Sequence record: MN871449.1
Length of the DNA: 64,000 nt
Strand: one strand, 5' to 3'
In this document: in pieces, positions 52,993 to 64,000 of the stretch
Numbering within the stretch: position 1 is the first letter of the stretch
Layout of the letters: each line of letters opens with the position of its first letter
Translations under genes and position numbers: made by a program
The notes under the pieces: model-generated
What the model saw: only the letters and a program-made list of their open reading frames with translations
Told to the model about the DNA's origin: nothing
The model's database searches: none

Positions 52993-53057
52993 GTCGTTTG
53001 ACCTAAGCAGGTTAATCGTCTCATTGTTTTTTTTTGGTTTCATTGAACGGAGGAGAG

Positions 53058-53444
53058 ATGTTTCGTTCATTCAAGCAACTCGAAGTATGGACAGGCAGAA
53101 TACCTGATTGGCGAGTTTGGGAAGGATTGGATATTGTCTTTGTCGATACCACGTTAAAAAGCGGAATAAAAGACTTTGCGCCCACCCCAGAATTACTCTG
53201 GCCATTTAAGCAAGGTATTGTCAGTGAAGCGGAATACGTTGATATCTATTACCGGTTGACCCGTGAACGGTTTATCAAAAATCCGGAACCGTGGCTGTGG
53301 TTGATTAATCAGGAACGAATTTGTTTAGCTTGCTATTGTAAACACGACTGCTTCTGTCATCGTCACCTCTTAAAAGATATCCTAGAAAAACTCTGTAGAA
53401 AAGAAAGAATTCGATTTATTGATCGTGGCGAGCCGATTTGGTGA
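53058..53444 (+). CDS. DUF488-like protein
   Basis: FAPTPELL...Y...YY...L and ICLACYC...CFCHRHLL are typical of DUF488. GGAGG SD before ATG 53058. Confidence 0.7.
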   Translation: MFRSFKQLEVWTGRIPDWRVWEGLDIVFVDTTLKSGIKDFAPTPELLWPFKQGIVSEAEYVDIYYRLTRERFIKNPEPWLWLINQERICLACYCKHDCFCHRHLLKDILEKLCRKERIRFIDRGEPIW

Positions 53445-53493: not shown

Positions 53494-54060
53494 ATGTACG
53501 TCGATTTATTCGGTCGTCCCAAATACGAGATTCTCGCTGATCTGATCAGTCAGCAGAATAACCTCACTACGCCGCTCAACGCCAGCTACCTGAGCTTTGG
53601 TAACATCACTGGTTCTACGGTACCGGGCACAGAAGATCGTGTCTCCGTGCTCGTTACAGGCCGTTCTCCGGTAACCGGGAGTAAGACCTTTACTTACACC
53701 CGTATCGAACTGAACAAACTGATGGCGTCGGTTGGCCCTACGTTAGTCCTGCCGGAAACAGCATCGACAATCGCTGATCTTTTACCGCTGATCAAAGCTA
53801 AATACAGTCTCTATATTGACGTTGAAGATATTGCGAATGCGGACGATTACCTGCCGTTCATTCCGTCCGGAGAAACCGCGGTTGTGACCATCCAGACCAA
53901 AGCTGGTACGACTTATAATAGTCACGTCTGGTCAGGTAACCTTGACGTCACGTGTAGTGGCGGTAGTAAGATTCCTCGTGGTTCTCTGCTTACCGAATCT
54001 GGTAAAGCGATTAACACCGAAGACAGCAAATTCATTCTGGTTGAACAAACCGGGAATTAA
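53494..54060 (+). CDS. Virion structural protein, candidate tailspike docking adaptor
   Basis: N-terminal domain resembles the 3..3396 family. The C-terminus reads LLTESGKAINTEDSKFILVE. Confidence 0.55.
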   Translation: MYVDLFGRPKYEILADLISQQNNLTTPLNASYLSFGNITGSTVPGTEDRVSVLVTGRSPVTGSKTFTYTRIELNKLMASVGPTLVLPETASTIADLLPLIKAKYSLYIDVEDIANADDYLPFIPSGETAVVTIQTKAGTTYNSHVWSGNLDVTCSGGSKIPRGSLLTESGKAINTEDSKFILVEQTGN

Positions 54061-54066
54061 GCGAAT

Positions 54067-54098
54067 AGGAGAGAGGGAGCAAATGCTCCCTCTCTCCT
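54067..54098. terminator. Bidirectional terminator hairpin
   Basis: AGGAGAGAGGGAGC-AAAT-GCTCCCTCTCTCCT between convergent genes. Confidence 0.85.
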
Positions 54099-54108
54099 CA
54101 TTTATGTT

Positions 54109-55770
54109 TTACTGGACGATTCCGATATTATTACCAATTTTACCATCAAAATCCGGCGAAACTCCCGTTGTACCGTTACCGATACAAGGACTATTCATTT
54201 TGACTTTAATATTGAGTAAAGCTTCTTTTAATCCGCTGAAAGCGCTATTAGACAAACCATTGATGAACGCTGGGTTGCTGAATAGATTACTTTCTTCCAG
54301 AAATCCTGTGGAAGTGGGTTGTACACCATTCCATTTTTCAGAATAGAAGACATTATTTTTGAGTTTAAATTTACCTAATAACCCTGGGAAACCGGACACC
54401 GTACTACCTACCACAAGTTCCGTAGCTGTTTTATTGGTGTAATAAAAAATGTTGCTATCAAGCGTCAAACTGAGTGCCGTTGCATTGTCATCGGCCTGCG
54501 GGTTTATAGCTATCGCATTATCGTTACTTGTAGTGACCGTATCAATGAACACACAGTTCCGTACAACATTATCATAGACGTAGCGAAACGCAGAGGTTTT
54601 TTGCCAAAATTTATCTGCTGTATTGGTGGTTCTCGCTACTCCATCGTTAAATGAAATCACATATTCGATGACGTTACCGATCGACCCAAAACCAAGCGTA
54701 TAGTACAAAGTATACGCATCATTGGACAATGGCGTGTACCCTTTAGAACTGTACCAGCTGTTACTGAAAGGTCCTTGGATAATCATTGAACCGCGGGCGT
54801 TGTTTGAAGTATATCCATAACGCGCCACGCAATAGTGACAATGATAATCGAAGTCAATAGTTTGACGGTCAGGGTAAGCCGGGCCGGCGCCGTGGATTTC
54901 GAAATTCTGTAATGTCAGATAACGTGTTCCAGAGAACCAAACCGGGACATCGGCTTGAGACGCACCTGTTGCGGTATTGTACACGTTGTAACGGTAACTG
55001 GAATAGTACAGTCCGTCCACACCCGTCGCCATGTCGTCGCCAATGACATTCCGCGATTGATTTTTACTCGCTGCCCAACCAATGAACACCGCCGAGTTAA
55101 TGATGTTCGTAAACGAACAGTTGATCACCCTAAAACCATAACTTTTCTTCTGGTCACCGTGATAAGTCGTTTTGTCCGAGAGATCTGGGTTACCTCTCAA
55201 TTGTACACCGGCATTCACGTTGTCGAACGTACAGTTACTGATTAAGAGTTTATGGGCAATGTTATTAAGCCCGGCATAATCGACCAAACTGTTCAAACAG
55301 AACACCCGATTGATTCCGTTCATCCCCCCTAACGACTCAGGTGTACCAATAAAGTCAACTTTGTTTAAGGTTAAGTTACAAATATTGTTATTGGCACTAT
55401 CGCCGATTGGAATCAGGTTAAGGTAAATGGCGGTTCTTTCTGATCCAGGTTTCGGGGAAATACGAATGTCTTCAAACTTTATTTGGCACGCGTACGCATC
55501 AATGATAATCGTATCGTTATTACTGGTGAGTATTGGTTTGGCGCCCGCACCGTATCTAGTAATAACAGACTGTATACCAGTCTTATTATTAAAGAAACTG
55601 GTTGCGGTACGGTTGTAATATGCCAGTTCGTAAGTTTGCCCTGCTTTAAGGTATAGCGTTAGCGGGTGGACTAGGTTGGCGTCAATCGCTGACTGAATCG
55701 AATTAAAGGGATTGCTTTTCGTCCCGGTCCCATTAACTGTAGCGGACGAATCAATGTAATAGTAGTTCAT
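54109..55770 (-). CDS. Right-handed beta-helix (pectin-lyase-like) polysaccharide depolymerase lacking the anchor domain
   Basis: YYIDSSATVNGTGTKSNPFNSIQSAI...LYLKAGQTY start, N-rich beta-helix repeats and SNPAFIN near the C-terminus. GAGGT SD before ATG 55770. Confidence 0.75.
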   Translation of the reverse strand: MNYYYIDSSATVNGTGTKSNPFNSIQSAIDANLVHPLTLYLKAGQTYELAYYNRTATSFFNNKTGIQSVITRYGAGAKPILTSNNDTIIIDAYACQIKFEDIRISPKPGSERTAIYLNLIPIGDSANNNICNLTLNKVDFIGTPESLGGMNGINRVFCLNSLVDYAGLNNIAHKLLISNCTFDNVNAGVQLRGNPDLSDKTTYHGDQKKSYGFRVINCSFTNIINSAVFIGWAASKNQSRNVIGDDMATGVDGLYYSSYRYNVYNTATGASQADVPVWFSGTRYLTLQNFEIHGAGPAYPDRQTIDFDYHCHYCVARYGYTSNNARGSMIIQGPFSNSWYSSKGYTPLSNDAYTLYYTLGFGSIGNVIEYVISFNDGVARTTNTADKFWQKTSAFRYVYDNVVRNCVFIDTVTTSNDNAIAINPQADDNATALSLTLDSNIFYYTNKTATELVVGSTVSGFPGLLGKFKLKNNVFYSEKWNGVQPTSTGFLEESNLFSNPAFINGLSNSAFSGLKEALLNIKVKMNSPCIGNGTTGVSPDFDGKIGNNIGIVQ

Positions 55771-55781
55771 TTTTACCTCAA

Positions 55782-57776
55782 TCAACTGAGCGTAGTGTGG
55801 ATATCGATCCAGGTATCATTCGGGATATCTACATAATCTCCCAACGCTGTCGTGACCGCACCGGTGGTAGTATCAGCGGTGTAAAGAATTTTTCTCACGC
55901 CGATAGTAATGACATTGGAAACGTCCGATTCGATTACCGCTACCAGGTTTTGAATACCCGAGCCAAAGGACCCAAATGGAGGTGTGATTTTCCAGGCCAC
56001 CGAAGAAGTCCCTGTGGAGGCCCCTGTGATCGTATATTTCCCTGTCGATACTCGAGCAGCTGTCACTGTTCCTAGTCCAGCGTAGCCACGGTTGATAGCA
56101 GATAAAGTATCGTTAGCGGAGAACTCTCCCGAGGTGACGAATGACCCGCGAGTGTTGGCTGAAAGATTATTCGTTAATCGAATCACTGCTCCGCGTGTCT
56201 GAGCATACGTCCCATTGTTGAGCTGAACAGCGACGTTGGTAGTCAGCGACTCCGTAACGGGGAGGTACACGATCCCGGAGGGCTCAGTCGTAACATAGCT
56301 GTTTAATACAGTATTGATGGTTACTTTCGCGACGCCATCGGAACCAGGCGGGTCAGCACGTAAGGGAATAAGGGAAGAGTTCTCAGAACGAACCGCTAAG
56401 CGCGCATAAAGCGTTGAAGTGTTGGCCGTCGCATCTCGCACCACTCCAAAACGTACCGTTCCTGAACTGTAACGCAGATCTCCTCGAGAACGAAGTGACG
56501 TAATTCTAAGGTAGTAACGCAGTGTGTTTGCGTTGACGGTAGTCACATTCGAGGGTTTCGATTGGAATTCAATCAAGTAAGCGCATACAGCTTCCGATAA
56601 ACCCGCACCCCCAGAATAAATACCGCTGAATACCGAGCCTTGAATATTGTCATTGACCGTCACCAATTTAACCCAAGACTCCGTGCTGAGCCAATCGGTT
56701 GGGTTAGTAGAAGAATTCAATAAAGCACTTGGTAAAAGGTCGGCTGTAACAATCTCTTTAGCTACGCGTTTTACGGCATCGGGAAAAGGCGCAGCAAAGT
56801 TTGTATACAGCCCGGGACCTGCTAAATAGGCTTTCACTGAACCATCTGCTTGGGGTAGAAAAATAATAGACGAAGAGAGAGTATCGTCTTCCGCGCCGCT
56901 GACCGGAAAGCGAGTGATGCTTCCTAACCGCGACCCGGCACCATAACCGTAAGGCTCCGTTACAGGGATAGCCATTCTGGCCGCCGTCATGACACCATTT
57001 TTAATCGCATAGGTCTGGAGACGACCTCTCTGATCAATAACCAACGCGCCTTTGTTATTCTTACCGCCAAAAACAATACCTGCAATCCCTTTTGGGTCGT
57101 TTGGTCTAGCTGTCAGATCAAATTGTCCGTTGGTTTTAATTCTTTCCCAGAAATCAATAGTCTCGCTTCTTACGTCAACTGGGAGAGTACCGCCCGTTAA
57201 TAGTTGCGACCAACCGTCTGCTAGTGTAACGTTATTCCCTGAGGAATCCGTCACCACAAGGTTGTCGCCGCTCTGTGCCCAATGGTCAACAGTGAGAGCA
57301 GAATTGTTGCTGAAATAAAAACGGAGCGATGTAGTGTCGATGACTACCATGATCCCCGAGAGCACTAACCCTTTCTTTAAAACGACTATATTATCGCTTC
57401 CGAACCCCGCGTTCTGACAGAGCCCGCTAACAAACCCACGATAAACACTCCCAATAATTTTACTGTAAACAACGTTATTGATCTGCTTACCGTCCTTATC
57501 GAGAAGCGATGTATAGGTCCCACCCCCTTGATTGAGATACCCGTTAACAAATGACCGAGTATCGTCGGTGTAAACGAAGAAGGGTTCGTTCTTTTCTGTC
57601 CCAGCTAATCCTAATTCGATAGTGTCAAAGGCACTTTCGAAATTTAATACCGAGCGCAACGAAGAAAGAGTGATCTGGTTTGTTTCGGTAGGAACCGTCA
57701 CTATAGGGACCATTGAGTTCTCAGGGACGCTAGCCGCACTCCCTAATTCCGAAATTTTTTGAGTATCATTAGACAT
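55782..57776 (-). CDS. Tail fibre / RBP with the shared N-terminal anchor
   Basis: MSNDTQKISEL...FFVYTD...GYLNQGGG anchor. The C-terminus (STGKYTITG...DIPNDTWIDIH) resembles phage tail-fibre C-terminal domains. Confidence 0.75.
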   Translation of the reverse strand: MSNDTQKISELGSAASVPENSMVPIVTVPTETNQITLSSLRSVLNFESAFDTIELGLAGTEKNEPFFVYTDDTRSFVNGYLNQGGGTYTSLLDKDGKQINNVVYSKIIGSVYRGFVSGLCQNAGFGSDNIVVLKKGLVLSGIMVVIDTTSLRFYFSNNSALTVDHWAQSGDNLVVTDSSGNNVTLADGWSQLLTGGTLPVDVRSETIDFWERIKTNGQFDLTARPNDPKGIAGIVFGGKNNKGALVIDQRGRLQTYAIKNGVMTAARMAIPVTEPYGYGAGSRLGSITRFPVSGAEDDTLSSSIIFLPQADGSVKAYLAGPGLYTNFAAPFPDAVKRVAKEIVTADLLPSALLNSSTNPTDWLSTESWVKLVTVNDNIQGSVFSGIYSGGAGLSEAVCAYLIEFQSKPSNVTTVNANTLRYYLRITSLRSRGDLRYSSGTVRFGVVRDATANTSTLYARLAVRSENSSLIPLRADPPGSDGVAKVTINTVLNSYVTTEPSGIVYLPVTESLTTNVAVQLNNGTYAQTRGAVIRLTNNLSANTRGSFVTSGEFSANDTLSAINRGYAGLGTVTAARVSTGKYTITGASTGTSSVAWKITPPFGSFGSGIQNLVAVIESDVSNVITIGVRKILYTADTTTGAVTTALGDYVDIPNDTWIDIHTTLS

Positions 57777-57801
57777 ATTTGTTTTCCTGAAGAAAGCTAA
57801 C

Positions 57802-57816
57802 TGGTCATACGAAACA
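57802..57816 (-). promoter_or_regulatory. 15-bp element TGTTTCGTATGACCA (late-promoter candidate)
   Basis: Identical copies at 60250 and 62611. It contains TATG. Confidence 0.65.
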
Positions 57817-57823
57817 CAAAAGA

Positions 57824-57847
57824 GAGGAGGGATTAAAACCCCTCCTC
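57824..57847. terminator. Hairpin between RBP genes
   Basis: GAGGAGGG-ATTAAAAC-CCCTCCTC. Confidence 0.65.
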
Positions 57848-57852
57848 GTGTT

Positions 57853-60228
57853 CTACCAAGTTAAATCAATATTTCGTATAGTTAATCGCTGAAGATTGAT
57901 GGTGTCTCCCGCAGCGTTGTTACGAAGAATAACGTTCAAAGTAAAATCGGCGGACGTGATAGGGTCAATGTTCCCGATGGCGCGAAAAGGTTTGATTGTC
58001 CCATTATCGTTAAGTACCGCAGTAATAACAGCAAAGCCACCGATAATGCTAATGCTACCTTCTATGTTGAAAATCGACCCGCCAGCGGCCTGCGTCAAAG
58101 AAGGACCGACTAGTACCCGTGTAGGCGACGTGTTATCCAAAAAACCAATTCCAATTGTTTTCGCCCCTAAGTTACCCGCGGTGGAACCCTCTAGTTTGAA
58201 AGTGATTTCATCATTGAGACGAATAGACCCTACGGGGTAGTTAATGACCTTATAGACCGATCCTGGAGTCGAGTCTGTGATTGATACACTGTTTTCAATC
58301 ACGTTGTCGTTTCCGTGGAAAGTGAATCGGGAACTGTTAATCAGTTTCACTCGATTTTTTGTTGCAATCGCCGCTAAAGATGAAATGGTAATAGGGCCCG
58401 TTAAATCAATTAACCCCTCAATAGAATCGTTCGCTACGAAAGCCCCGCCATTTACTGACGAGATGGTTGCCTTAAGTCCTTTAATAGGGTTACTGATTCC
58501 TGCCGAAGTCATCGTCCTTAAAATTGCTACGTCTGGTTTAATACCAATATAATTGATGTTTTTGAACTGGCAGTTCGTTACCAATGAATCCGCAGCAGAA
58601 TGGTACGTATCACAAATTACCGCTGTTTTCGTGACGTAATTTATCGTGATATTTTCAAACAGGTTATTGCTACAAGGAACACGATCACCACCATAACTCT
58701 CGAAGGATAAAATGTTATTACTGTTTGTCACCCCGAAGATCATGCCGTTTCGAATGGAACTATTAGTGAAGGAGGAGAAACGGCAAATTACCGACGGCGC
58801 CGCGGTATTATTGAATACCAGTGTAAAACCATCAATATGACAGTTATCGCCGCTTTCTGCCCATGTTATCATGGCGTTAGCATTAAGGGTCGTATCGGCA
58901 ATCGCAGTGAGGTTGGTAATGCGAGTATCGTGAGAACCAAATGCCAGTTCACTGATTCTTCCGCGAAAAGTGATATTGATATTATCAAAACGCGTACGAC
59001 AAAAAGTATTCCCATAAACCACCGCGCGGGCTTTACCTGAGATGTTACGGAAAACGCAATTAAAAGTTGCGCTGTCGCCAGTCCAATGGTCCCAAGTGTC
59101 TACAACAAAGTCTTGAACGATGGCGTTTTCACAAACAAATAGTGGCTGATTAAAACGAGCATTGTAAGCGGGCTGATTTGCTTGCATAATGGTCAGATCA
59201 GAACCAGTATAATCGACAGGAATATCCAACGTGATATTGCTACCGGATACACCTATTACTTTACAAAGCTTCATGTAAAACGGGATAAGAAAACCACCGT
59301 TAAGAATCCCTCGCACGGATGAGATCCTCACTAAATCGCCTGTTTTGTATTTACTGACGAGAGAGGGGTCAATGCCAACCACGTTACTCCCGTAGGTGGA
59401 GGTAAGATTGTTCTTAGGGACATTACTCACATATTCCGGGTGATAATTGCCCGGTGCGAAAATAGCGCCTTGCATCCAAGTAGTATCAATAGGAGTTAAT
59501 GTTTTTAATGTTGCCCCGTTTCCATTAAGGACAGAATTACTAGGGATATAAATAGGTCCAGAAATGGAATAGGTACTTTTACAAAACGAGACGGGGTATT
59601 TTCCGGCCGCAACTTTTAGTGCTTGTTGGATGGCAGAAAGTGAGTCCGTACCTCCCGGGACTGCACCAAAAAACTCTGGATAAATTACGGGCTCAGAGAG
59701 TACCCTTTCCCAGTAGAATCCGTTTCCCGCGGCGATTGTCCCGCCGTCATCCGTTGCTGATCCGATTCCGGCGATAAATTCCCCGCCGCCTGTTTTTCCA
59801 CCCGCTACCCAACTTTTCAACTTTACGCGTTGTCCTGCGTACAGAGGCGATAGTGTCCGTAACTTAGCGAAGGAATCTACACCGTTAGTAAAATAATCTA
59901 ACCCTCGTAACGTCTGCCCGGAGATGTACCGAACAGCGACGCCATTAATATCTACGAGCGGCGTGTAAGAACCCCCACCTTGGTTGACGTAACCCTGTAC
60001 CGCGGTTTTGGTTACATCCGTGTAAACAAAGTAAGACTCTCCCTTCTCCGTTCCATCTGCACCTTCTGCGATTGAGTTGAAGGCTTTGTCGAACAACAAG
60101 ACTGAACGCAGTGTTGAGATATCTGTGTTATTGGTCTCCGTCTGTTCAGAGACCACAGGGAGTAGAGTGTTTTCAGTCAGCGTAGTAGCAGGGTTCAACT
60201 CGCTAATTTTCTGTATTTCATTAGACAT
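57853..60228 (-). CDS. Tailspike with anchor, GQRVxLKS...GGG module and beta-helix depolymerase domain
   Basis: KISEL anchor, GQRVKLKSW..GGKTGGGEF, then PEFFGAVPGGTDSLSAIQQAL at the beta-helix start. Confidence 0.85.
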   Translation of the reverse strand: MSNEIQKISELNPATTLTENTLLPVVSEQTETNNTDISTLRSVLLFDKAFNSIAEGADGTEKGESYFVYTDVTKTAVQGYVNQGGGSYTPLVDINGVAVRYISGQTLRGLDYFTNGVDSFAKLRTLSPLYAGQRVKLKSWVAGGKTGGGEFIAGIGSATDDGGTIAAGNGFYWERVLSEPVIYPEFFGAVPGGTDSLSAIQQALKVAAGKYPVSFCKSTYSISGPIYIPSNSVLNGNGATLKTLTPIDTTWMQGAIFAPGNYHPEYVSNVPKNNLTSTYGSNVVGIDPSLVSKYKTGDLVRISSVRGILNGGFLIPFYMKLCKVIGVSGSNITLDIPVDYTGSDLTIMQANQPAYNARFNQPLFVCENAIVQDFVVDTWDHWTGDSATFNCVFRNISGKARAVVYGNTFCRTRFDNINITFRGRISELAFGSHDTRITNLTAIADTTLNANAMITWAESGDNCHIDGFTLVFNNTAAPSVICRFSSFTNSSIRNGMIFGVTNSNNILSFESYGGDRVPCSNNLFENITINYVTKTAVICDTYHSAADSLVTNCQFKNINYIGIKPDVAILRTMTSAGISNPIKGLKATISSVNGGAFVANDSIEGLIDLTGPITISSLAAIATKNRVKLINSSRFTFHGNDNVIENSVSITDSTPGSVYKVINYPVGSIRLNDEITFKLEGSTAGNLGAKTIGIGFLDNTSPTRVLVGPSLTQAAGGSIFNIEGSISIIGGFAVITAVLNDNGTIKPFRAIGNIDPITSADFTLNVILRNNAAGDTINLQRLTIRNIDLTW

Positions 60229-60249
60229 GTCTTTAATCCTGAATGGGGA

Positions 60250-60264
60250 TGGTCATACGAAACA
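60250..60264 (-). promoter_or_regulatory. 15-bp element TGTTTCGTATGACCA
   Basis: Exact copy, 22 bp upstream of ATG 60228. Confidence 0.65.
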
Positions 60265-60298
60265 AGGCAATGAGGGGACCTAGGTCCCCTCATTGCCT
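60265..60298. terminator. Perfect 34-bp palindrome / terminator hairpin
   Basis: AGGCAATGAGGGGACCTAGGTCCCCTCATTGCCT is its own reverse complement. Confidence 0.75.
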
Positions 60299-60303
60299 AT
60301 AAC

Positions 60304-60525
60304 TTAAGAGCCTTCAATGTCACTGGCTACGAGTTCCAATTGAGCCGCAATAAACCGTGCATCGGTATCGATGACCACCGAAATATATTGATCCATTCCG
60401 TAGATATCTGCCCAAGCCAAATCTTTCAATTTAGCGTCCAGTGCACTGATGGTCGTTTCTTTCCCAACTAAGTCTTCTCGAGTTTGACAAGAAAGGATGC
60501 GAACGGTGTCGCCTACTTGAAACAT
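60304..60525 (-). CDS. Small SH3/KOW-like beta-barrel hypothetical protein
   Basis: AAGGA SD, MFQVGDTVRI...LVGKETTI...LELV, 73 aa. Confidence 0.6.
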   Translation of the reverse strand: MFQVGDTVRILSCQTREDLVGKETTISALDAKLKDLAWADIYGMDQYISVVIDTDARFIAAQLELVASDIEGS

Positions 60526-60538
60526 AGTGAGTTCCTTC

Positions 60539-62584
60539 TTAAGAAATCCAAACGTGTTCATTGGTGAAATATGCCGTTCCAACAAAACCGTTTAAGTACT
60601 CTTGAACTTTTGCCTTGACTGTACCGTTTGGCGCACGTAACCAGACCCACACGTTATTCCAATCGGTTGTCACCGCAGATACAGATTTGATTGACGATTG
60701 TATTACGTTCCCGGCAGAGTCGTAAAAATCCACTCGAAGTGCGACGTAACCAGCCGTCAACGAGGTAATTTTGATTTCGGCCTCCGCGTGGAAAATATCT
60801 CCGCCGCGCAGTGTCACGTCCTGCCAGTAAGAGACGTTACGTACGCTTCCTTGTGTAATTTTTCGTGAGTGCGGTGAATTAGGGTTAGAATAATTCGTAG
60901 TATCAATCGTATAAGTGAGGTCGGCGTTAGTGTAACTCGGTGTCCATGCGGCAGTTTGATACTGGTTGATCAGAATAACGTTAAGGGCACTACAAGGTCG
61001 CATGGGACGACTGGCGTTATCCATGTTTCCAGAGGTCATTTTGTTCCTCACCCTTAAGGTCCCGATCAACTGGTAGTTATCCCCCTCTACACCTACGATC
61101 TCGGTAGTTCTCCTGACTCCCGTCATGTATTTACTGGTGTCAGTTCCATCAATATCGACGTGGGCACCGCCAGTGTTGGTAATGAAGACGAGGTAAGGGC
61201 GACCCGTACTATTTTCTACCGGAATACCGCTCCATGAGTTCGCGTTCGGTCCGCCTCCCATTGTCCCCCCTTTCATGATCAAATAGGGTTGGTTTTTGGT
61301 TGAGGTGTACGAAAGTCGAATATGAGGGTTGTTGTTATTGTTTTCCAAGTGACAACCGTGGAGCTCGACGTTAGATTGATAAATATCAACTGAGATGTCG
61401 CAATAATCAAAACTGGTTCCAAAGAACCTGACATCGATACTCGAGGCACTCCCTGATAAGTAGAGCCCGGTACCGTCGAAAGTAAAATTACAACAATCTG
61501 CAATCACGCCGCCGTAAATAGTCACGTTCTCATTGGAATCAGTATTCGCATAAAAGGCCATCCCTCGGCGCCAACATTGTCCGATGATCGGACTGTATAA
61601 ACGAATGAGGTAAGCACTCTTCCCGTTAAAACAAACTCCGTCCCTAAACCCAGAGACCTTAAGATTGTAGAAGGAAATATTGTGCGCATCGACACCAAAT
61701 GACACGCCGTCTACGACACTGTTAGTGTCGGGTTGATGAGTATTAATTAAGGTACGCTGAACGCGAATATTATCAAATTTCCCTGGATTAGCCGCAGGTG
61801 ACAAATAGCCGCTGATTGTTAAGGTATAACCCGTCGTAACAGAGGGCAGCGACAAAAGTACTGCATTACGCATATCGATCACTAAATCGGTCGGGAAATT
61901 TACGGTACTGACCGCGTATACTTTCCCTAAACACGTTAGTGCAATGCCATTTTTGGCACAGTAGTTGACCGCTTTTTGAATATTACTAGTATCGTCCAGT
62001 ACGCCGTCCCCGACTGCACCAAAGTCCTCAAAAGACAACTGATCTGTAATAATCCGTTGCCAGTAGAATTCATTCCCGGCAGCAATCGTGCCGTTGTCAT
62101 CCGCATTTACCCCTAAACGCGCAACGAAAATACCCCCACCCGTAACCCCGTCTTTGTAGTAACTCTTCAGCGTGACACGCTGTCCTTGGTACCATGGTTT
62201 AAGCGTCCGTAATGCGTCGAAACTCTCTACTCCTTGTAACATGAATAAAGAGTTGACAATATGCGCATTCGTCGCGTAGCGAACTTGTGTCGTACTGTCT
62301 GACATTAATGCAGAGTAAGTCCCGTTCCCTTGGTTTACATACCCCAAGACATAGTCTCGTGTACTGTTTTCGTAAACAAAGAAAACATTCCCCTCTGTAG
62401 TTACACTGAGCCCGGCAGCAATCGTGCTGTACGCGTTCTCAAAACCTAACGTTTCTCTGAGGGTACCAATACTAACTTTTTCGGATTCGTTTCCATTCGC
62501 TTCTGAGAGCGGAAGAAACGCATTCTCTGACGGATTAGAGCTGGGCGATAGTTCAGAAATTTTCAATGCAGTGATATCGGTCAT
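60539..62584 (-). CDS. Tailspike with anchor, beta-helix depolymerase and C-terminal carbohydrate-binding-like beta-sandwich
   Basis: KISEL anchor, GQRVTLKSYY..GGG, FEDFGAVGDGVLDDT, and C-terminal VDFYDSAGNVI...DW..V...RAPNGTVKAKV. GGAG SD before ATG 62584. Confidence 0.85.
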   Translation of the reverse strand: MTDITALKISELSPSSNPSENAFLPLSEANGNESEKVSIGTLRETLGFENAYSTIAAGLSVTTEGNVFFVYENSTRDYVLGYVNQGNGTYSALMSDSTTQVRYATNAHIVNSLFMLQGVESFDALRTLKPWYQGQRVTLKSYYKDGVTGGGIFVARLGVNADDNGTIAAGNEFYWQRIITDQLSFEDFGAVGDGVLDDTSNIQKAVNYCAKNGIALTCLGKVYAVSTVNFPTDLVIDMRNAVLLSLPSVTTGYTLTISGYLSPAANPGKFDNIRVQRTLINTHQPDTNSVVDGVSFGVDAHNISFYNLKVSGFRDGVCFNGKSAYLIRLYSPIIGQCWRRGMAFYANTDSNENVTIYGGVIADCCNFTFDGTGLYLSGSASSIDVRFFGTSFDYCDISVDIYQSNVELHGCHLENNNNNPHIRLSYTSTKNQPYLIMKGGTMGGGPNANSWSGIPVENSTGRPYLVFITNTGGAHVDIDGTDTSKYMTGVRRTTEIVGVEGDNYQLIGTLRVRNKMTSGNMDNASRPMRPCSALNVILINQYQTAAWTPSYTNADLTYTIDTTNYSNPNSPHSRKITQGSVRNVSYWQDVTLRGGDIFHAEAEIKITSLTAGYVALRVDFYDSAGNVIQSSIKSVSAVTTDWNNVWVWLRAPNGTVKAKVQEYLNGFVGTAYFTNEHVWIS

Positions 62585-62610
62585 TTCACGACTCCGATGT
62601 AAACAAAAAA

Positions 62611-62625
62611 TGGTCATACGAAACA
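62611..62625 (-). promoter_or_regulatory. 15-bp element TGTTTCGTATGACCA
   Basis: Exact copy upstream of ATG 62584. Confidence 0.65.
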
Positions 62626-62744
62626 AAAAAGAGAGGAGCTTTTCCGTATCCTTCTCTAGTTAATGTGCAATAAACCAAAACGTAATCTTTCAAGCTGTTA
62701 ATCGTATGTACGATTGACTATTAGAGAGCTTAAGAGGCAAAATA

Positions 62745-64000
62745 ATGGCTGACATTTATGTTAAACTTTCTGAACTTTCTCGGCCGAGTACGCCAGTGAA
62801 TGACTCAGATGTGGTGTTCATTTCCCAGTTAAACAATACAGAAAATACTTCTTCCGCAATGAGTATTTCTGATTTACGCAATTTACTCAATTTTGAAACA
62901 GCTTTTGATAGTACTGTCGCAGGGTTAAGTAATACATCGGCGAATCAGATTTTCTTTGTTTACACCGATGACACCAAAACGAAAGTTCGTGCCTATGTAA
63001 ACCGGTCAGGTATTGCAGAAGTCATGAATGATGCTGACGGAAGTCCACTTTTATATCGCACGCGTAAAGGGTTAAATATTCTTGCCGGGAAAGATGAGTT
63101 AATCAATCCCGCGCAAGGGACCTCGCTGATAGCGATGGGTACAGGTGAGACAATAGCTGACGGTTTGGGCCATTGGCTCTCGGCGACAGTAGATATATTC
63201 AACATGACTGTTTCGCCTAATAAAATTAGCACTCGTGGATTTTATAAAGAAAAAGATGGCGGTGCTGGTGATTGGAACAAGACAGGCGTTGTCAATCTTT
63301 CATTGGCAGGAAAACACGTTATTACCGAGGGGAAGATCTATAACAAACTCGGGGTAGAATATCTCATTGATATCTCTAAAGGAGAAATTGACCCTTTAGC
63401 GAATGGCGCGATGGCTACTACCTACGACGAAGTGTGGTCAACAAAAGAAAACGTTGTATGTCTCGGCGATGCCATTAACGGGATTTTCAAGCAAATCCCA
63501 ATAGAAGTTTACACCTCCAATACCGCCGCCACTTATACTGGATATAAAAGATTACGAATAACGTTTTCTCCAAATCTTTATCGTATTTGTAAAAACGCGG
63601 TAAAAGTAAGGAACGGTGTGACTTATGACATGCGAGGGTCAACAATCTATGTTGTTCCTACCCCGTCTAATAGTTATCCCGTCACTGGTAAAAAGCTTAA
63701 TGGCTTCCAACATGGTTACGATGAAGTAAAAGAAAAATTCGATGCTATTAATGGGGCGAATTATTGGGGTAGCGTGAGTTGCCAAAATGTCACTTTCTTG
63801 GGCGGCGATATACGCGGTGATTTGAATGTCAGTAAAACTCCGGATCAATGTTCTTCGGGAGTTGGTATTTTAATCATTAACCCAGAATATGTTTTCCATG
63901 ACGGCGTAGCCATTTCGATGTTCACCTGGTGTGCGGTAGCGATGGCAGGTACAACGACGCAGAGCCTTTTCAATGACGGCACTGACTTTGATGACAACGT
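62745..64000 (+). CDS. Tailspike with the shared anchor, 3'-truncated by the window edge (absent from the ORF track)
   Basis: GAGG SD, MADIYVKLSEL...LRNLLNFETAF...FFVYTDDTK...YVN, then ISTRGFYKEKDGGAGDW. The frame stays open to the window end. Confidence 0.85.
   Translation, partial: MADIYVKLSELSRPSTPVNDSDVVFISQLNNTENTSSAMSISDLRNLLNFETAFDSTVAGLSNTSANQIFFVYTDDTKTKVRAYVNRSGIAEVMNDADGSPLLYRTRKGLNILAGKDELINPAQGTSLIAMGTGETIADGLGHWLSATVDIFNMTVSPNKISTRGFYKEKDGGAGDWNKTGVVNLSLAGKHVITEGKIYNKLGVEYLIDISKGEIDPLANGAMATTYDEVWSTKENVVCLGDAINGIFKQIPIEVYTSNTAATYTGYKRLRITFSPNLYRICKNAVKVRNGVTYDMRGSTIYVVPTPSNSYPVTGKKLNGFQHGYDEVKEKFDAINGANYWGSVSCQNVTFLGGDIRGDLNVSKTPDQCSSGVGILIINPEYVFHDGVAISMFTWCAVAMAGTTTQSLFNDGTDFDDN

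What the first reader, a model, noticed from the sequence alone, without database searches (positions are those of the whole stretch)
53494..64000. Modular multi-tailspike array with one conserved anchor and divergent receptor-binding ends
Seen: four genes (starts 57776-, 60228-, 62584- and 62745+) share a roughly 95-aa N-terminus (K(I/L)SEL...LR..L.F..A(F/Y)......G......FFVY....(V)..Y.N.G). Two of them also share a second module (G(V).SF..LRTL.P...GQRV.LKS....GGG.F...DD.GTIAAGN.FYW.R) before diverging abruptly at the FGA beta-helix start. The C-termini are all different: fibre tip, two distinct beta-helices (one with a CBM-like sandwich) and a third truncated enzyme. The region looks more AT-rich than the core and the array may continue beyond the window. 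Known: multi-depolymerase branched RBP systems occur in ackermannviruses and Klebsiella jumbo phages. I am not aware of this anchor family being described in a phiKZ-like chassis. Inference: a plug-and-play capsule/O-antigen targeting platform whose anchors compete for, or occupy, distinct baseplate sites.
Basis: partly seen in the sequence, partly recalled or inferred. Interest (0 to 1): 0.75.

Follow-up and report, generated by a model that had tools for sequence, protein, structure and literature searches.

The report
Multi-tailspike array of a Klebsiella jumbo phage
This is the start of a cluster of receptor-binding tail spike genes from a Klebsiella jumbo phage closely related to the published phage phiKp24; the spikes share one attachment domain and carry different capsule-degrading ends, which is real and neatly modular but already known in kind.

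Summary
The window is 100% identical to the unannotated record MN871449 (phage KpXa_1, host K. pneumoniae). The four genes named share a ~100-residue N-terminal domain. The array runs about 18 kb past the window. It holds 7 anchored genes, and the genome has 2 more elsewhere.

The anchor occurs only in phiKp24-like Klebsiella phages and in Moabite/2050HW-like Serratia and Pectobacterium jumbo phages, with 6-8 copies per array examined. It has no Pfam or NCBIfam family and no match among solved structures.

In six Klebsiella phages the anchors fall into six classes, essentially one per phage. Identity averages 76% within a class and 35% between classes. The bodies behind one class differ between phages.

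Exchange happens at two junctions, near residue 100 and near residue 180. phiKp24 gp310 is a clean recombinant: the N-part of the 791-aa spike joined to the body of the 681-aa spike.

Only the anchor-class analysis is new here. Where the anchors dock is not shown.

The parts
53494..54060 (+). 188-aa virion structural protein (DUF7941). It is the conserved left border of the variable spike array.
   Evidence: Pfam DUF7941, E 1.9e-16. phrog_2935 virion structural protein, E 1.4e-29. Present next to the array in phiKp24, KpLz-2_45, MJ359 and LPKP23. The two 686/689-aa proteins that close the array carry the same N-domain.
54067..54098 (.). Hairpin of 14 pairs between the convergent 188-aa and 553-aa genes; terminator-like.
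   Evidence: phiKp24 has a terminator annotated on both strands at the same place.
54109..55770 (-). 553-aa spike-like protein without the anchor. It lies just downstream of the 664-aa gene and has no promoter motif of its own.
   Evidence: phrog_16942, E 1.7e-219. 89.5% identical to phiKp24 NC gp100 (my mapping: gp313 of the paper). 30% identical to the 575-aa paralogue at the far end of the array, E 4e-31. No Pfam, NCBIfam or PDB sequence match.
55782..57776 (-). 664-aa anchored receptor-binding protein. The anchor (class 2) is residues 1-100 = 57477-57776. The body is all-beta and not a recognised beta-helix.
   Evidence: Anchor profile, E 2e-43. phrog_20024 tail protein on residues 204-663. 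Phage_tail_C_2 at 26.7 bits against a cutoff of 27 on residues 570-660. 95% identical to phiKp24 NC gp101. The AF2 model has mean pLDDT of only 62 and no fold match. Body homologues occur behind other N-termini elsewhere.
57803..57847 (-). Hairpin (57824-57847) followed by the 14-nt motif GTTTCGTATGACCA (57803-57816), whose TATG starts 33 nt upstream of the 664-aa start codon.
   Evidence: A TATG core is the phiKZ late-promoter signature (PMC4666361).
57853..60228 (-). 791-aa anchored tailspike. Anchor (class 2): 59929-60228. PF27114 beta module: about 59656-59886. KP34gp57-like depolymerase body with CBM: 57913-59685.
   Evidence: Anchor, E 6e-42. PF27114. Residues 115-191 match PDB 7VYV/7LZJ/6TGF. 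Residues 182-772 match PDB 8BKE at E 2.1e-125. 8BKE is the K63-specific KP34gp57.
60251..60298 (-). 15-pair hairpin (60265-60298) followed by the same 14-nt motif (60251-60264), whose TATG starts 29 nt upstream of the 791-aa start codon.
60304..60525 (-). 73-aa ORF that follows the 681-type body wherever that body occurs.
   Evidence: ORF. Called as a 73-residue gene in the public assembly. A 73-aa ORF of the same size and position follows the same body in phiKp24 (NC gp102) and KpLz-2_45 (gp100); the three were not aligned here. No PHROG, Pfam or NCBIfam match.
60539..62584 (-). 681-aa anchored tailspike. Anchor (class 4): 62285-62584. PF27114 beta module: about 61973-62236. Then a pectate-lyase-like beta-helix body.
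   Evidence: Anchor, E 1e-40. PF27114. Residues 117-204 match PDB 6TGF/7VYV. Sub-threshold Pect-lyase_RHGA_epim. 98% identical to KpLz-2_45 gp099. The body from residue ~176 is 92-100% identical per 25-residue bin to phiKp24 NC gp103.
62612..62711 (.). Divergent control region. The 14-nt motif lies on the minus strand (62612-62625) for the 681-aa gene. A TCGTATG variant lies on the plus strand (62702-62711) for the 1115-aa gene.
   Evidence: phiKp24 has promoters annotated in its equivalent divergent gap.
62745..64000 (+). First 418 codons of a 1115-aa anchored spike (anchor class 8, 62745-63044). It is cut by the window end, not broken.
   Evidence: The full ORF is L001:11746-15093. phrog_15695 tail fiber protein, E 1.9e-263. 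No Pfam or PDB sequence match.

Best explanation
The region is the left third of the receptor-binding-protein array of KpXa_1, a phiKp24-like jumbo phage of Klebsiella in the nucleus-forming phiKZ-like family Chimalliviridae.

Each large gene encodes a tail spike or fibre. The spike is presumably trimeric, but that was not tested here.

Seven array genes begin with one ~100-residue alpha/beta domain. It most likely fixes the protein into the branched fibre apparatus at the tail tip.

The domain exists as about six long-diverged paralogue classes, and each Klebsiella phage keeps one of each. I read the classes as address labels for different docking positions, not as interchangeable plugs competing for one site.

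Behind the anchor, or behind the anchor plus a PF27114 beta module, come exchangeable capsule-degrading or capsule-binding bodies. Recombination at two junctions, near residues 100 and 180, moves these bodies between phages and between slots. At least one body moves together with a small downstream ORF.

Two anchored proteins outside the window add T4 gp10-like branch domains. These probably carry the anchor-less spikes encoded just downstream of them.

Expression is in short units. Each starts at a TATG-containing motif of the phiKZ late-promoter type, which in most units lies just downstream of the preceding gene's hairpin.

Shown here: homology, copy number, classes, breakpoints, motifs. 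Inferred: attachment role, slot specificity, docking partners, promoter function.
For: - Identity: the region is 100% identical to MN871449 and 89% identical to phiKp24 over the shared parts.
- Copy number: 7 anchored genes in the KpXa_1 array and 7 in phiKp24, 6 in each of four other Klebsiella phages, and 8 in Serratia phage Moabite. The domain is always at the N-terminus. A piecewise genome scan finds 2 more copies in KpXa_1.
- Distribution: 130 representative clusters among 1.84 billion proteins, nearly all at residues 1-105 of proteins 570-1350 aa long. Only 23 phage records carry it, all of this jumbo-phage clade.
- Classes: six clusters. Within-class identity averages 0.76 (minimum 0.49). 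Between-class identity averages 0.35 (maximum 0.44). Of 97 alignment columns, 20 are class-specific and 9 universal. Protein lengths within one class range from 574 to 1304 aa.
- Breakpoints: 791 vs phiKp24 gp310 is 88-100% identical over residues 1-175 and ~20% after. 681 vs the same protein is 28-40% over the anchor and 92-100% from ~176 on. The 664 and 1115 proteins lose similarity to their class mates at ~100.
- Fold: the AF2 model of the anchor has pLDDT 85.9.
- Hubs: residues 99-280 of the 918-aa protein match solved branch-domain structures 9D80, 9D83 and 7RFO. The 892-aa protein shares phrog_12242.
- Bodies: PDB 8BKE, 7VYV and 6TGF.
- Control signals: hairpins and the motif, and the phiKZ TATG late promoter.
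- Published phiKp24 model of hyperbranched fibres with depolymerase activity.
Against: - No evidence here that any of these proteins is in the KpXa_1 virion. The phiKp24 preprint contains no mention of mass spectrometry or proteomics.
- The docking partner is unknown. The anchor has no structural relative among solved attachment domains.
- The presumed primary fibre of the phiKp24 model carries the same anchor as the presumed secondary ones. That fits poorly with a simple 'anchor docks on a gp10-like branch' scheme.
- One body sits on a class-4 anchor in KpXa_1 and on a class-2 anchor in phiKp24, so the slot does not constrain the body.
- Class structure could partly reflect conserved gene order with recombination confined downstream of the anchor.
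- Moabite's eight anchors cannot be assigned to the Klebsiella classes.
- The model is a monomer of a domain that is probably trimeric.
Confidence: 0.7

Rival explanations
1. All anchors bind equivalent copies of one docking site. The different spikes then compete, and particles carry a stochastic or expression-weighted mix.
For: All copies belong to one domain family with 9 universally conserved columns. The same body works behind two different anchor classes. KpXa_1 and phiKp24 each tolerate two class-2 genes.
Against: Six classes are each kept once per phage. Minimum within-class identity (0.49) exceeds maximum between-class identity (0.44), and 20 columns are class-specific and conserved. 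There is no sign of homogenisation between paralogues in one genome.
Confidence: 0.15
2. The anchors of different classes bind each other, stacking or bundling into a common stalk, rather than each binding a separate site on the baseplate or on a hub.
For: The proposed primary fibre carries the same domain as the others. Short anchor-only proteins exist: 207 aa in KpXa_1 and 132 aa in phage 2050HW. The number of gp10-like branch domains seen looks small for the number of spikes.
Against: There is no direct evidence. Only a monomer model is available. Published branched systems use gp10-like domains.
Confidence: 0.1
3. The shared N-terminus is not an attachment domain. It is instead a folding, trimerisation or assembly-sorting module common to late fibre proteins of this clade.
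For: It has no similarity to any known attachment domain. It is confined to nucleus-forming jumbo phages.
Against: N-terminal position ahead of exchangeable bodies is the rule for particle-binding domains of spikes. Several spikes in the same array do without it, so it is not needed for folding of such bodies.
Confidence: 0.05

Closest known systems
Hyperbranched tail fibre system of Klebsiella phage phiKp24 (vB_KpM_FBKp24, Maaswegvirus, Chimalliviridae)
   Same: Same flanks (the 188-aa DUF7941 gene on one side; two DUF7941 fibre-like genes and dUTPase on the other). Same anchor family, with 7 array copies. Orthologues of the 664-aa (95%) and 553-aa (89.5%) proteins. The same 681-type body plus the 73-aa ORF. 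The same gp10-like hubs.
   Different: KpXa_1 has a KP34gp57-like 791-aa spike that phiKp24 lacks. It has a 1115-aa class-8 body instead of a 737-aa one. The 681-type body sits on a class-4 anchor rather than class 2. The class-8 gene is in the opposite orientation. The phiKp24 papers group the fibres by N-terminal length, and my searches of them found no mention of a shared anchor.
Tail fibre arrays of Serratia phages Moabite / 2050HW / Yaphecito and Pectobacterium phage vB_ParM-25
   Same: Same anchor family (8 copies in Moabite). Same position after the virion RNA polymerase, protease and 188-aa genes.
   Different: Anchors are only 22-41% identical to the Klebsiella classes and cannot be assigned to them. 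Hosts and bodies differ.
Branched spike systems of CBA120 (TSP1-4) and G7C (gp63.1/gp66)
   Same: The 918-aa hub just outside the window has T4 gp10-like branch domains that match solved structures of this kind. The logic is the same: short N-terminal docking parts on exchangeable enzymes.
   Different: The anchor here is a different domain. No Pfam match was found, including the TSP1/Gp66 N-terminal family. The best fold match to such a protein has E 0.067 and TM 0.31. There are also many more spikes.
Multi-depolymerase jumbo phages RaK2 / PhiK64-1
   Same: Many capsule depolymerases on one particle; these phages are cited as the classical case.
   Different: The anchor was not found in them by tblastn of the phage collection. 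By my own knowledge, not tested here, they are not phiKZ-like.
KP34gp57 capsule depolymerase (PDB 8BKE)
   Same: Residues 182-772 of the 791-aa spike match residues 29-611 of the chain at E 2e-125. The match covers the beta-helix, the insertion domain and the C-terminal CBM.
   Different: KP34gp57 has a short podovirus-type N-terminus. Here the body is fused to the anchor plus PF27114. K63 specificity is not shown for this protein.

Membership tests
phiKp24-type multi-RBP array | Array lies between the 188-aa DUF7941 gene and the pair of DUF7941 fibre-like genes plus dUTPase | tested here: met
phiKp24-type multi-RBP array | Orthologues of individual phiKp24 fibres | tested here: met
   664 aa 95%, 553 aa 89.5%, 661 aa 96%, and the 681 body 92-100% per 25-residue bin.
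phiKp24-type multi-RBP array | Primary fibre with a T4 gp10-like branching fold | tested here: met
   The 918-aa protein (L001:17225-19981, outside the window) matches 9D80, 9D83 and 7RFO over residues 99-280.
phiKp24-type multi-RBP array | Hyperbranched fibres on the particle; depolymerase activity of the spikes | not testable with these tools
   Published only for phiKp24.
Chimalliviridae (phiKZ-like, nucleus-forming) | phiKZ-type virion RNA polymerase, S80 prohead protease and internal head proteins | tested here: met
   Peptidase_S80 in the window. phiKZ_IP elsewhere in the genome. RNA polymerase beta subunits are annotated beside the array in phiKp24, KpLz-2_45 and Moabite.
Chimalliviridae (phiKZ-like, nucleus-forming) | Chimallin shell and PhuZ tubulin | not tested
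   Reported for phiKp24. The genus is placed in the family by ICTV. I did not search for them in KpXa_1.
Chimalliviridae (phiKZ-like, nucleus-forming) | Late promoters with a TATG core | tested here: inconclusive
   The motif is present upstream of 9 spike or fibre transcription units and fits PMC4666361. No transcript data are available.
CBA120/G7C-type anchors (TSP1/Gp66 N-terminal domain) | N-terminal domain of that Pfam family or fold | tested here: not met
   No Pfam hit on the anchor. Fold search finds only the anchor's own clade at E < 1e-3.
Pfam PF27114 Phage_tail_beta | Profile match | tested here: met
   Precomputed hits on the 681- and 791-aa proteins only. The model is not in the local Pfam copy.
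KP34gp57-like depolymerases | Homology over the catalytic beta-helix, insertion domain and CBM | tested here: met
   E 2.1e-125 over residues 182-772.
KP34gp57-like depolymerases | K63 capsule specificity | not testable with these tools
   Known for KP34gp57 only.

The most novel reading that the evidence does not exclude
The ~100-residue anchor is a structurally undescribed attachment domain specific to one clade of nucleus-forming jumbo phages. Its six conserved paralogue classes act as positional address labels that place every spike, hub fibres included, at a defined node of the fibre tree. Host-range change would then proceed by swapping promoter-to-terminator body cassettes behind fixed addresses.
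Probability: 0.4. Interest if true: 0.55.

Novelty: new member of a known kind. Interest (0 to 1): 0.35.

Why it matters
Klebsiella capsule diversity limits which strains a phage can infect, and phiKp24-like phages have the broadest known capsule range. The array consists of fixed anchor classes with bodies exchanged at two sharp junctions. That explains how relatives differ in predicted specificity and gives a rule for annotating the unannotated KpXa_1-group genomes. It also defines a domain family that Pfam and the PDB lack. It does not change the published picture of the system.

Tried and rejected
- Pfam, NCBIfam and PDB sequence searches give no credible hit on the anchor. The two PDB hits at E 0.012 and 0.26 are chance.
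- A fold search of the confident anchor model against the PDB gave only SH2-like noise (E >= 0.19, TM < 0.35).
- The AF2 model of the 664-aa protein was poor (pLDDT 62) and its fold search gave nothing significant. 'Fibre tip' therefore stays unproven.
- Sigma-70 promoter matches are not above chance: 15 found against 18.7 expected.
- DNA repeats between anchors are too short and too weak to indicate recent gene conversion.
- A literature search for PDB codes 9D80-9D84 returned only irrelevant papers, so those entries are cited by the depositors' names only.
- Moabite anchors could not be mapped onto the Klebsiella classes.

None was put into a tool. Only the TATG motif, verified in PMC4666361, is used.


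Full report
**Origin of the window.** Region 53494-64000 is 100% identical to three unannotated GenBank records of one phage: KpXa_1, KpLz_1_41 and KpYy_2_45. They are labelled 'Serratia phage' but their host is Klebsiella pneumoniae, and they are ~304 kb long. The region is 89% identical, over 64% of its length, to Klebsiella phage vB_KpM_FBKp24 (phiKp24). Window coordinate = MN871449 coordinate minus 62000. I fetched the continuation as L001 and the equivalent loci of phiKp24, KpLz-2_45, MJ359, LPKP23, KpSz_1 and Serratia phage Moabite.

**Check of the observation.**
- The four N-termini align over ~100 residues with 29-50% identity.
- A profile built from the copies scores each at E 1e-38 to 1e-43.
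- The 791- and 681-aa proteins share a further module. It is 60-64% identical over residues ~126-175, and similarity collapses where the beta-helix begins.
- That module is Pfam PF27114 Phage_tail_beta. It is recorded only on these two proteins of the locus. It matches the domain ahead of the beta-helix in solved depolymerases 7VYV/7LZJ and in WceF 6TGF.
- GC is 0.4505 here against 0.4768 +/- 0.011 elsewhere in the window, lower than any other 10.5-kb stretch. The whole array is 0.441 against 0.480 for its right flank.

**Anatomy of the array.** In transcription order the window holds the following units.
- On the minus strand: the 681-aa spike with a 73-aa ORF, a strong hairpin, the 791-aa spike, a hairpin, the 664-aa protein, the 553-aa anchor-less protein, and a terminator-like hairpin between the convergent genes (annotated on both strands at the same place in phiKp24).
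- On the plus strand: the first 418 codons of a 1115-aa spike.

Beyond the window the plus-strand series continues with proteins of 655, 918, 721, 661, 892, 607 and 575 aa. Then come two DUF7941 fibre-like proteins of 686 and 689 aa.

Seven array proteins carry the anchor: 664, 791, 681, 1115, 655, 918 and 892 aa. A piecewise scan of the rest of the record finds two more. One is a 745-aa spike with anchor, beta module and pectate-lyase-like body. The other is a 207-aa protein that is little more than the anchor.

The 721- and 607-aa proteins share a different, weakly similar N-terminus (E 4e-7). The 553- and 575-aa proteins are paralogues that start directly with their body.

**The bodies.**
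- 791 aa: residues 182-772 match PDB 8BKE at E 2e-125. 8BKE is KP34gp57, a K63-specific depolymerase with an insertion domain and a C-terminal CBM.
- 681 aa: only sub-threshold pectate-lyase-type matches.
- 664 aa: an all-beta body with a borderline Phage_tail_C_2 end. Its phiKp24 orthologue is not among the 14 published depolymerase fibres. Homologues of this body occur behind other N-termini, including in a Pantoea genome. My model of it was too poor to classify.
- 1115 aa: a large PHROG tail-fibre family, with no Pfam or PDB sequence match.

**The anchor family.** It has no Pfam-A or NCBIfam model. It corresponds to the first ~110 positions of phrog_27731, 'unknown function'.
- Against 1.84 billion representative proteins, a profile of the four window copies finds 130 clusters (101 at E < 1e-10). 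Nearly all have the match at residues 1-105 of proteins 570-1350 aa long. Some are short proteins or fragments.
- In the phage collection it occurs in only 23 records: the phiKp24-like Klebsiella phages, the Moabite/2050HW-like Serratia phages, and one Pectobacterium phage. tblastn with a single anchor finds 3-7 places per record.
- An AF2 model built from 74 sequences is confident (pLDDT 85.9). It shows a compact alpha/beta domain followed by a helix.
- That model has no significant match among solved structures. Among predicted viral structures it matches only its own clade.

**Classes and exchange.** The 46 anchors from seven phages cluster into six groups. Each holds one protein from each of the six Klebsiella phages, with two exceptions. 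KpXa_1 and phiKp24 have two class-2 genes each. MJ359's sixth anchor is a singleton, so class 4 lacks an MJ359 member.
- Within-class identity averages 0.76 (minimum 0.49). Between-class identity averages 0.35 (maximum 0.44).
- Of 97 columns, 9 are conserved in all classes. Another 20 are conserved within classes but differ among them.
- Protein lengths within one class range widely, for example 574-760, 603-1115 and 892-1304 aa.
- Identity profiles give sharp junctions. Class mates of the 664- and 1115-aa proteins lose similarity at about residue 100. Those of the 791- and 681-aa proteins lose it at about residue 175-180.
- phiKp24 NC gp103 is a clean mosaic. By my mapping it is gp310 of the paper, using paper number = 413 minus RefSeq number, which fits gene sizes and annotations. 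It is 88-100% identical to the 791-aa spike over residues 1-175. It is 92-100% identical to the 681-aa spike from ~176 to the end.
- A 73-aa ORF follows that body in KpXa_1, phiKp24 and KpLz-2_45. Body plus small ORF therefore moves as a unit, and the body has changed slot from class 4 to class 2.

**Control signals.** The exact 14-mer GTTTCGTATGACCA occurs three times in 37 kb. Each time it lies directly after a hairpin, with its TATG starting 29-34 nt upstream of the start of the 664-, 791- or 681-aa gene.
- Variants with the same TATG core precede the 1115-, 655-, 918-, 661-, 892- and 686-aa genes.
- It is absent before the 553-, 73-, 721-, 607-, 575- and 689-aa genes.
- The core with its flank is rare in the rest of the window: 5 matches, 4 of them at these genes.
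- phiKZ late promoters are defined by TATG, with the G as the start site (PMC4666361).
- I therefore propose these late transcription units: 681+73, 791, 664+553, 1115, 655, 918+721, 661, 892+607+575, and 686+689. This is inference; no transcript data exist.

**Mechanism.** By position and by analogy with all studied spikes, the anchor is the particle-binding part (established knowledge, restated). One conserved class per phage, class-specific conserved columns and no homogenisation favour separate docking positions over competition for one site.
- Two anchored proteins are hubs. Residues 99-280 of the 918-aa protein match solved gp10-like branch domains (9D80, 9D83, 7RFO). The 892-aa protein has one such domain.
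- Each hub gene is followed, within its proposed unit, by anchor-less spikes. These are the natural candidates for docking on it.
- What the anchors themselves bind is not shown. The published phiKp24 model makes the 918-type fibre the primary one. Yet that fibre has the same anchor as the others, so the anchors may all bind a tail or baseplate component, or each other.

**Comparison with what is known.** phiKp24 has been described as a nucleus-forming jumbo phage with a complex fibre apparatus. It has 14 predicted fibres in layers around a gp10-like primary fibre. Eleven of those fibres have confirmed depolymerase activity covering 13 capsule types. Its genus is in Chimalliviridae.

KpXa_1 is a new, unannotated member with a partly different set of bodies.

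The phiKp24 papers I could read sort fibres by N-terminal length, and my searches of them found no mention of a shared anchor family, its classes or the junctions. The DepoCatalog preprint notes only that N-termini are conserved within genera. That part is a modest addition.

**Verdict.** This is a real, well-defined and biologically neat feature, but a known kind of system in a close relative of a published phage. Interest 0.35.

Noticed in passing
window 57803-57816, 60251-60264, 62612-62625 (minus strand); 62702-62711 (plus strand): An exact 14-nt motif with a TATG core sits just after a hairpin and upstream of each anchored gene (its TATG starts 29-34 nt before the start codon). Variants precede six more spike or fibre genes outside the window. 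It resembles the phiKZ late-promoter signature.
   Followed up: partly
window 60304-60525 (-): A 73-aa ORF with no family match. A 73-aa ORF of the same size and position follows the 681-type depolymerase body in KpXa_1, phiKp24 and KpLz-2_45 (not aligned here). It may be a body-specific assembly factor.
   Followed up: partly
L013:28338-28961 (+) (MN871449 226338-226961): A 207-aa protein that consists of little more than the anchor domain. Similar short anchor-only proteins exist in Serratia phage 2050HW (132 aa) and among the representative hits.
   Followed up: partly
L013:27053-28288 (+): A 411-aa protein with a Pfam Tad3 (Thoeris inhibitor) domain, E 1.5e-24. It lies next to a phiKZ-type internal head protein gene and is a likely anti-defence gene.
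   Followed up: no
L013:17973-20210 (-): An eighth full-length anchored spike (745 aa: anchor, beta module, pectate-lyase-like body) encoded about 75 kb beyond the end of the main array.
   Followed up: partly
window 53494-54060 (+); L001:32462-36608: The DUF7941 domain brackets the array. It occurs alone in the 188-aa protein and as the N-terminus of two ~690-aa fibre-like proteins. It may be a second attachment family.
   Followed up: partly
L001:11746-15093 compared with L007:29909-32122: The class-8 anchored gene lies on opposite sides of the divergent promoter gap in KpXa_1 and phiKp24. The last ~75 residues of the two otherwise unrelated bodies are 60-76% identical.
   Followed up: no
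GenBank records MN871447-MN871453: Several records named 'Serratia phage Kp...' list Klebsiella pneumoniae as host, are flagged UNVERIFIED and carry no annotation. Three of them are identical over this region.
   Followed up: no
window 53034-53444 (+): The gene next to the 188-aa gene carries Pfam DUF488-N3a in the public gene call (128 aa).
   Followed up: no
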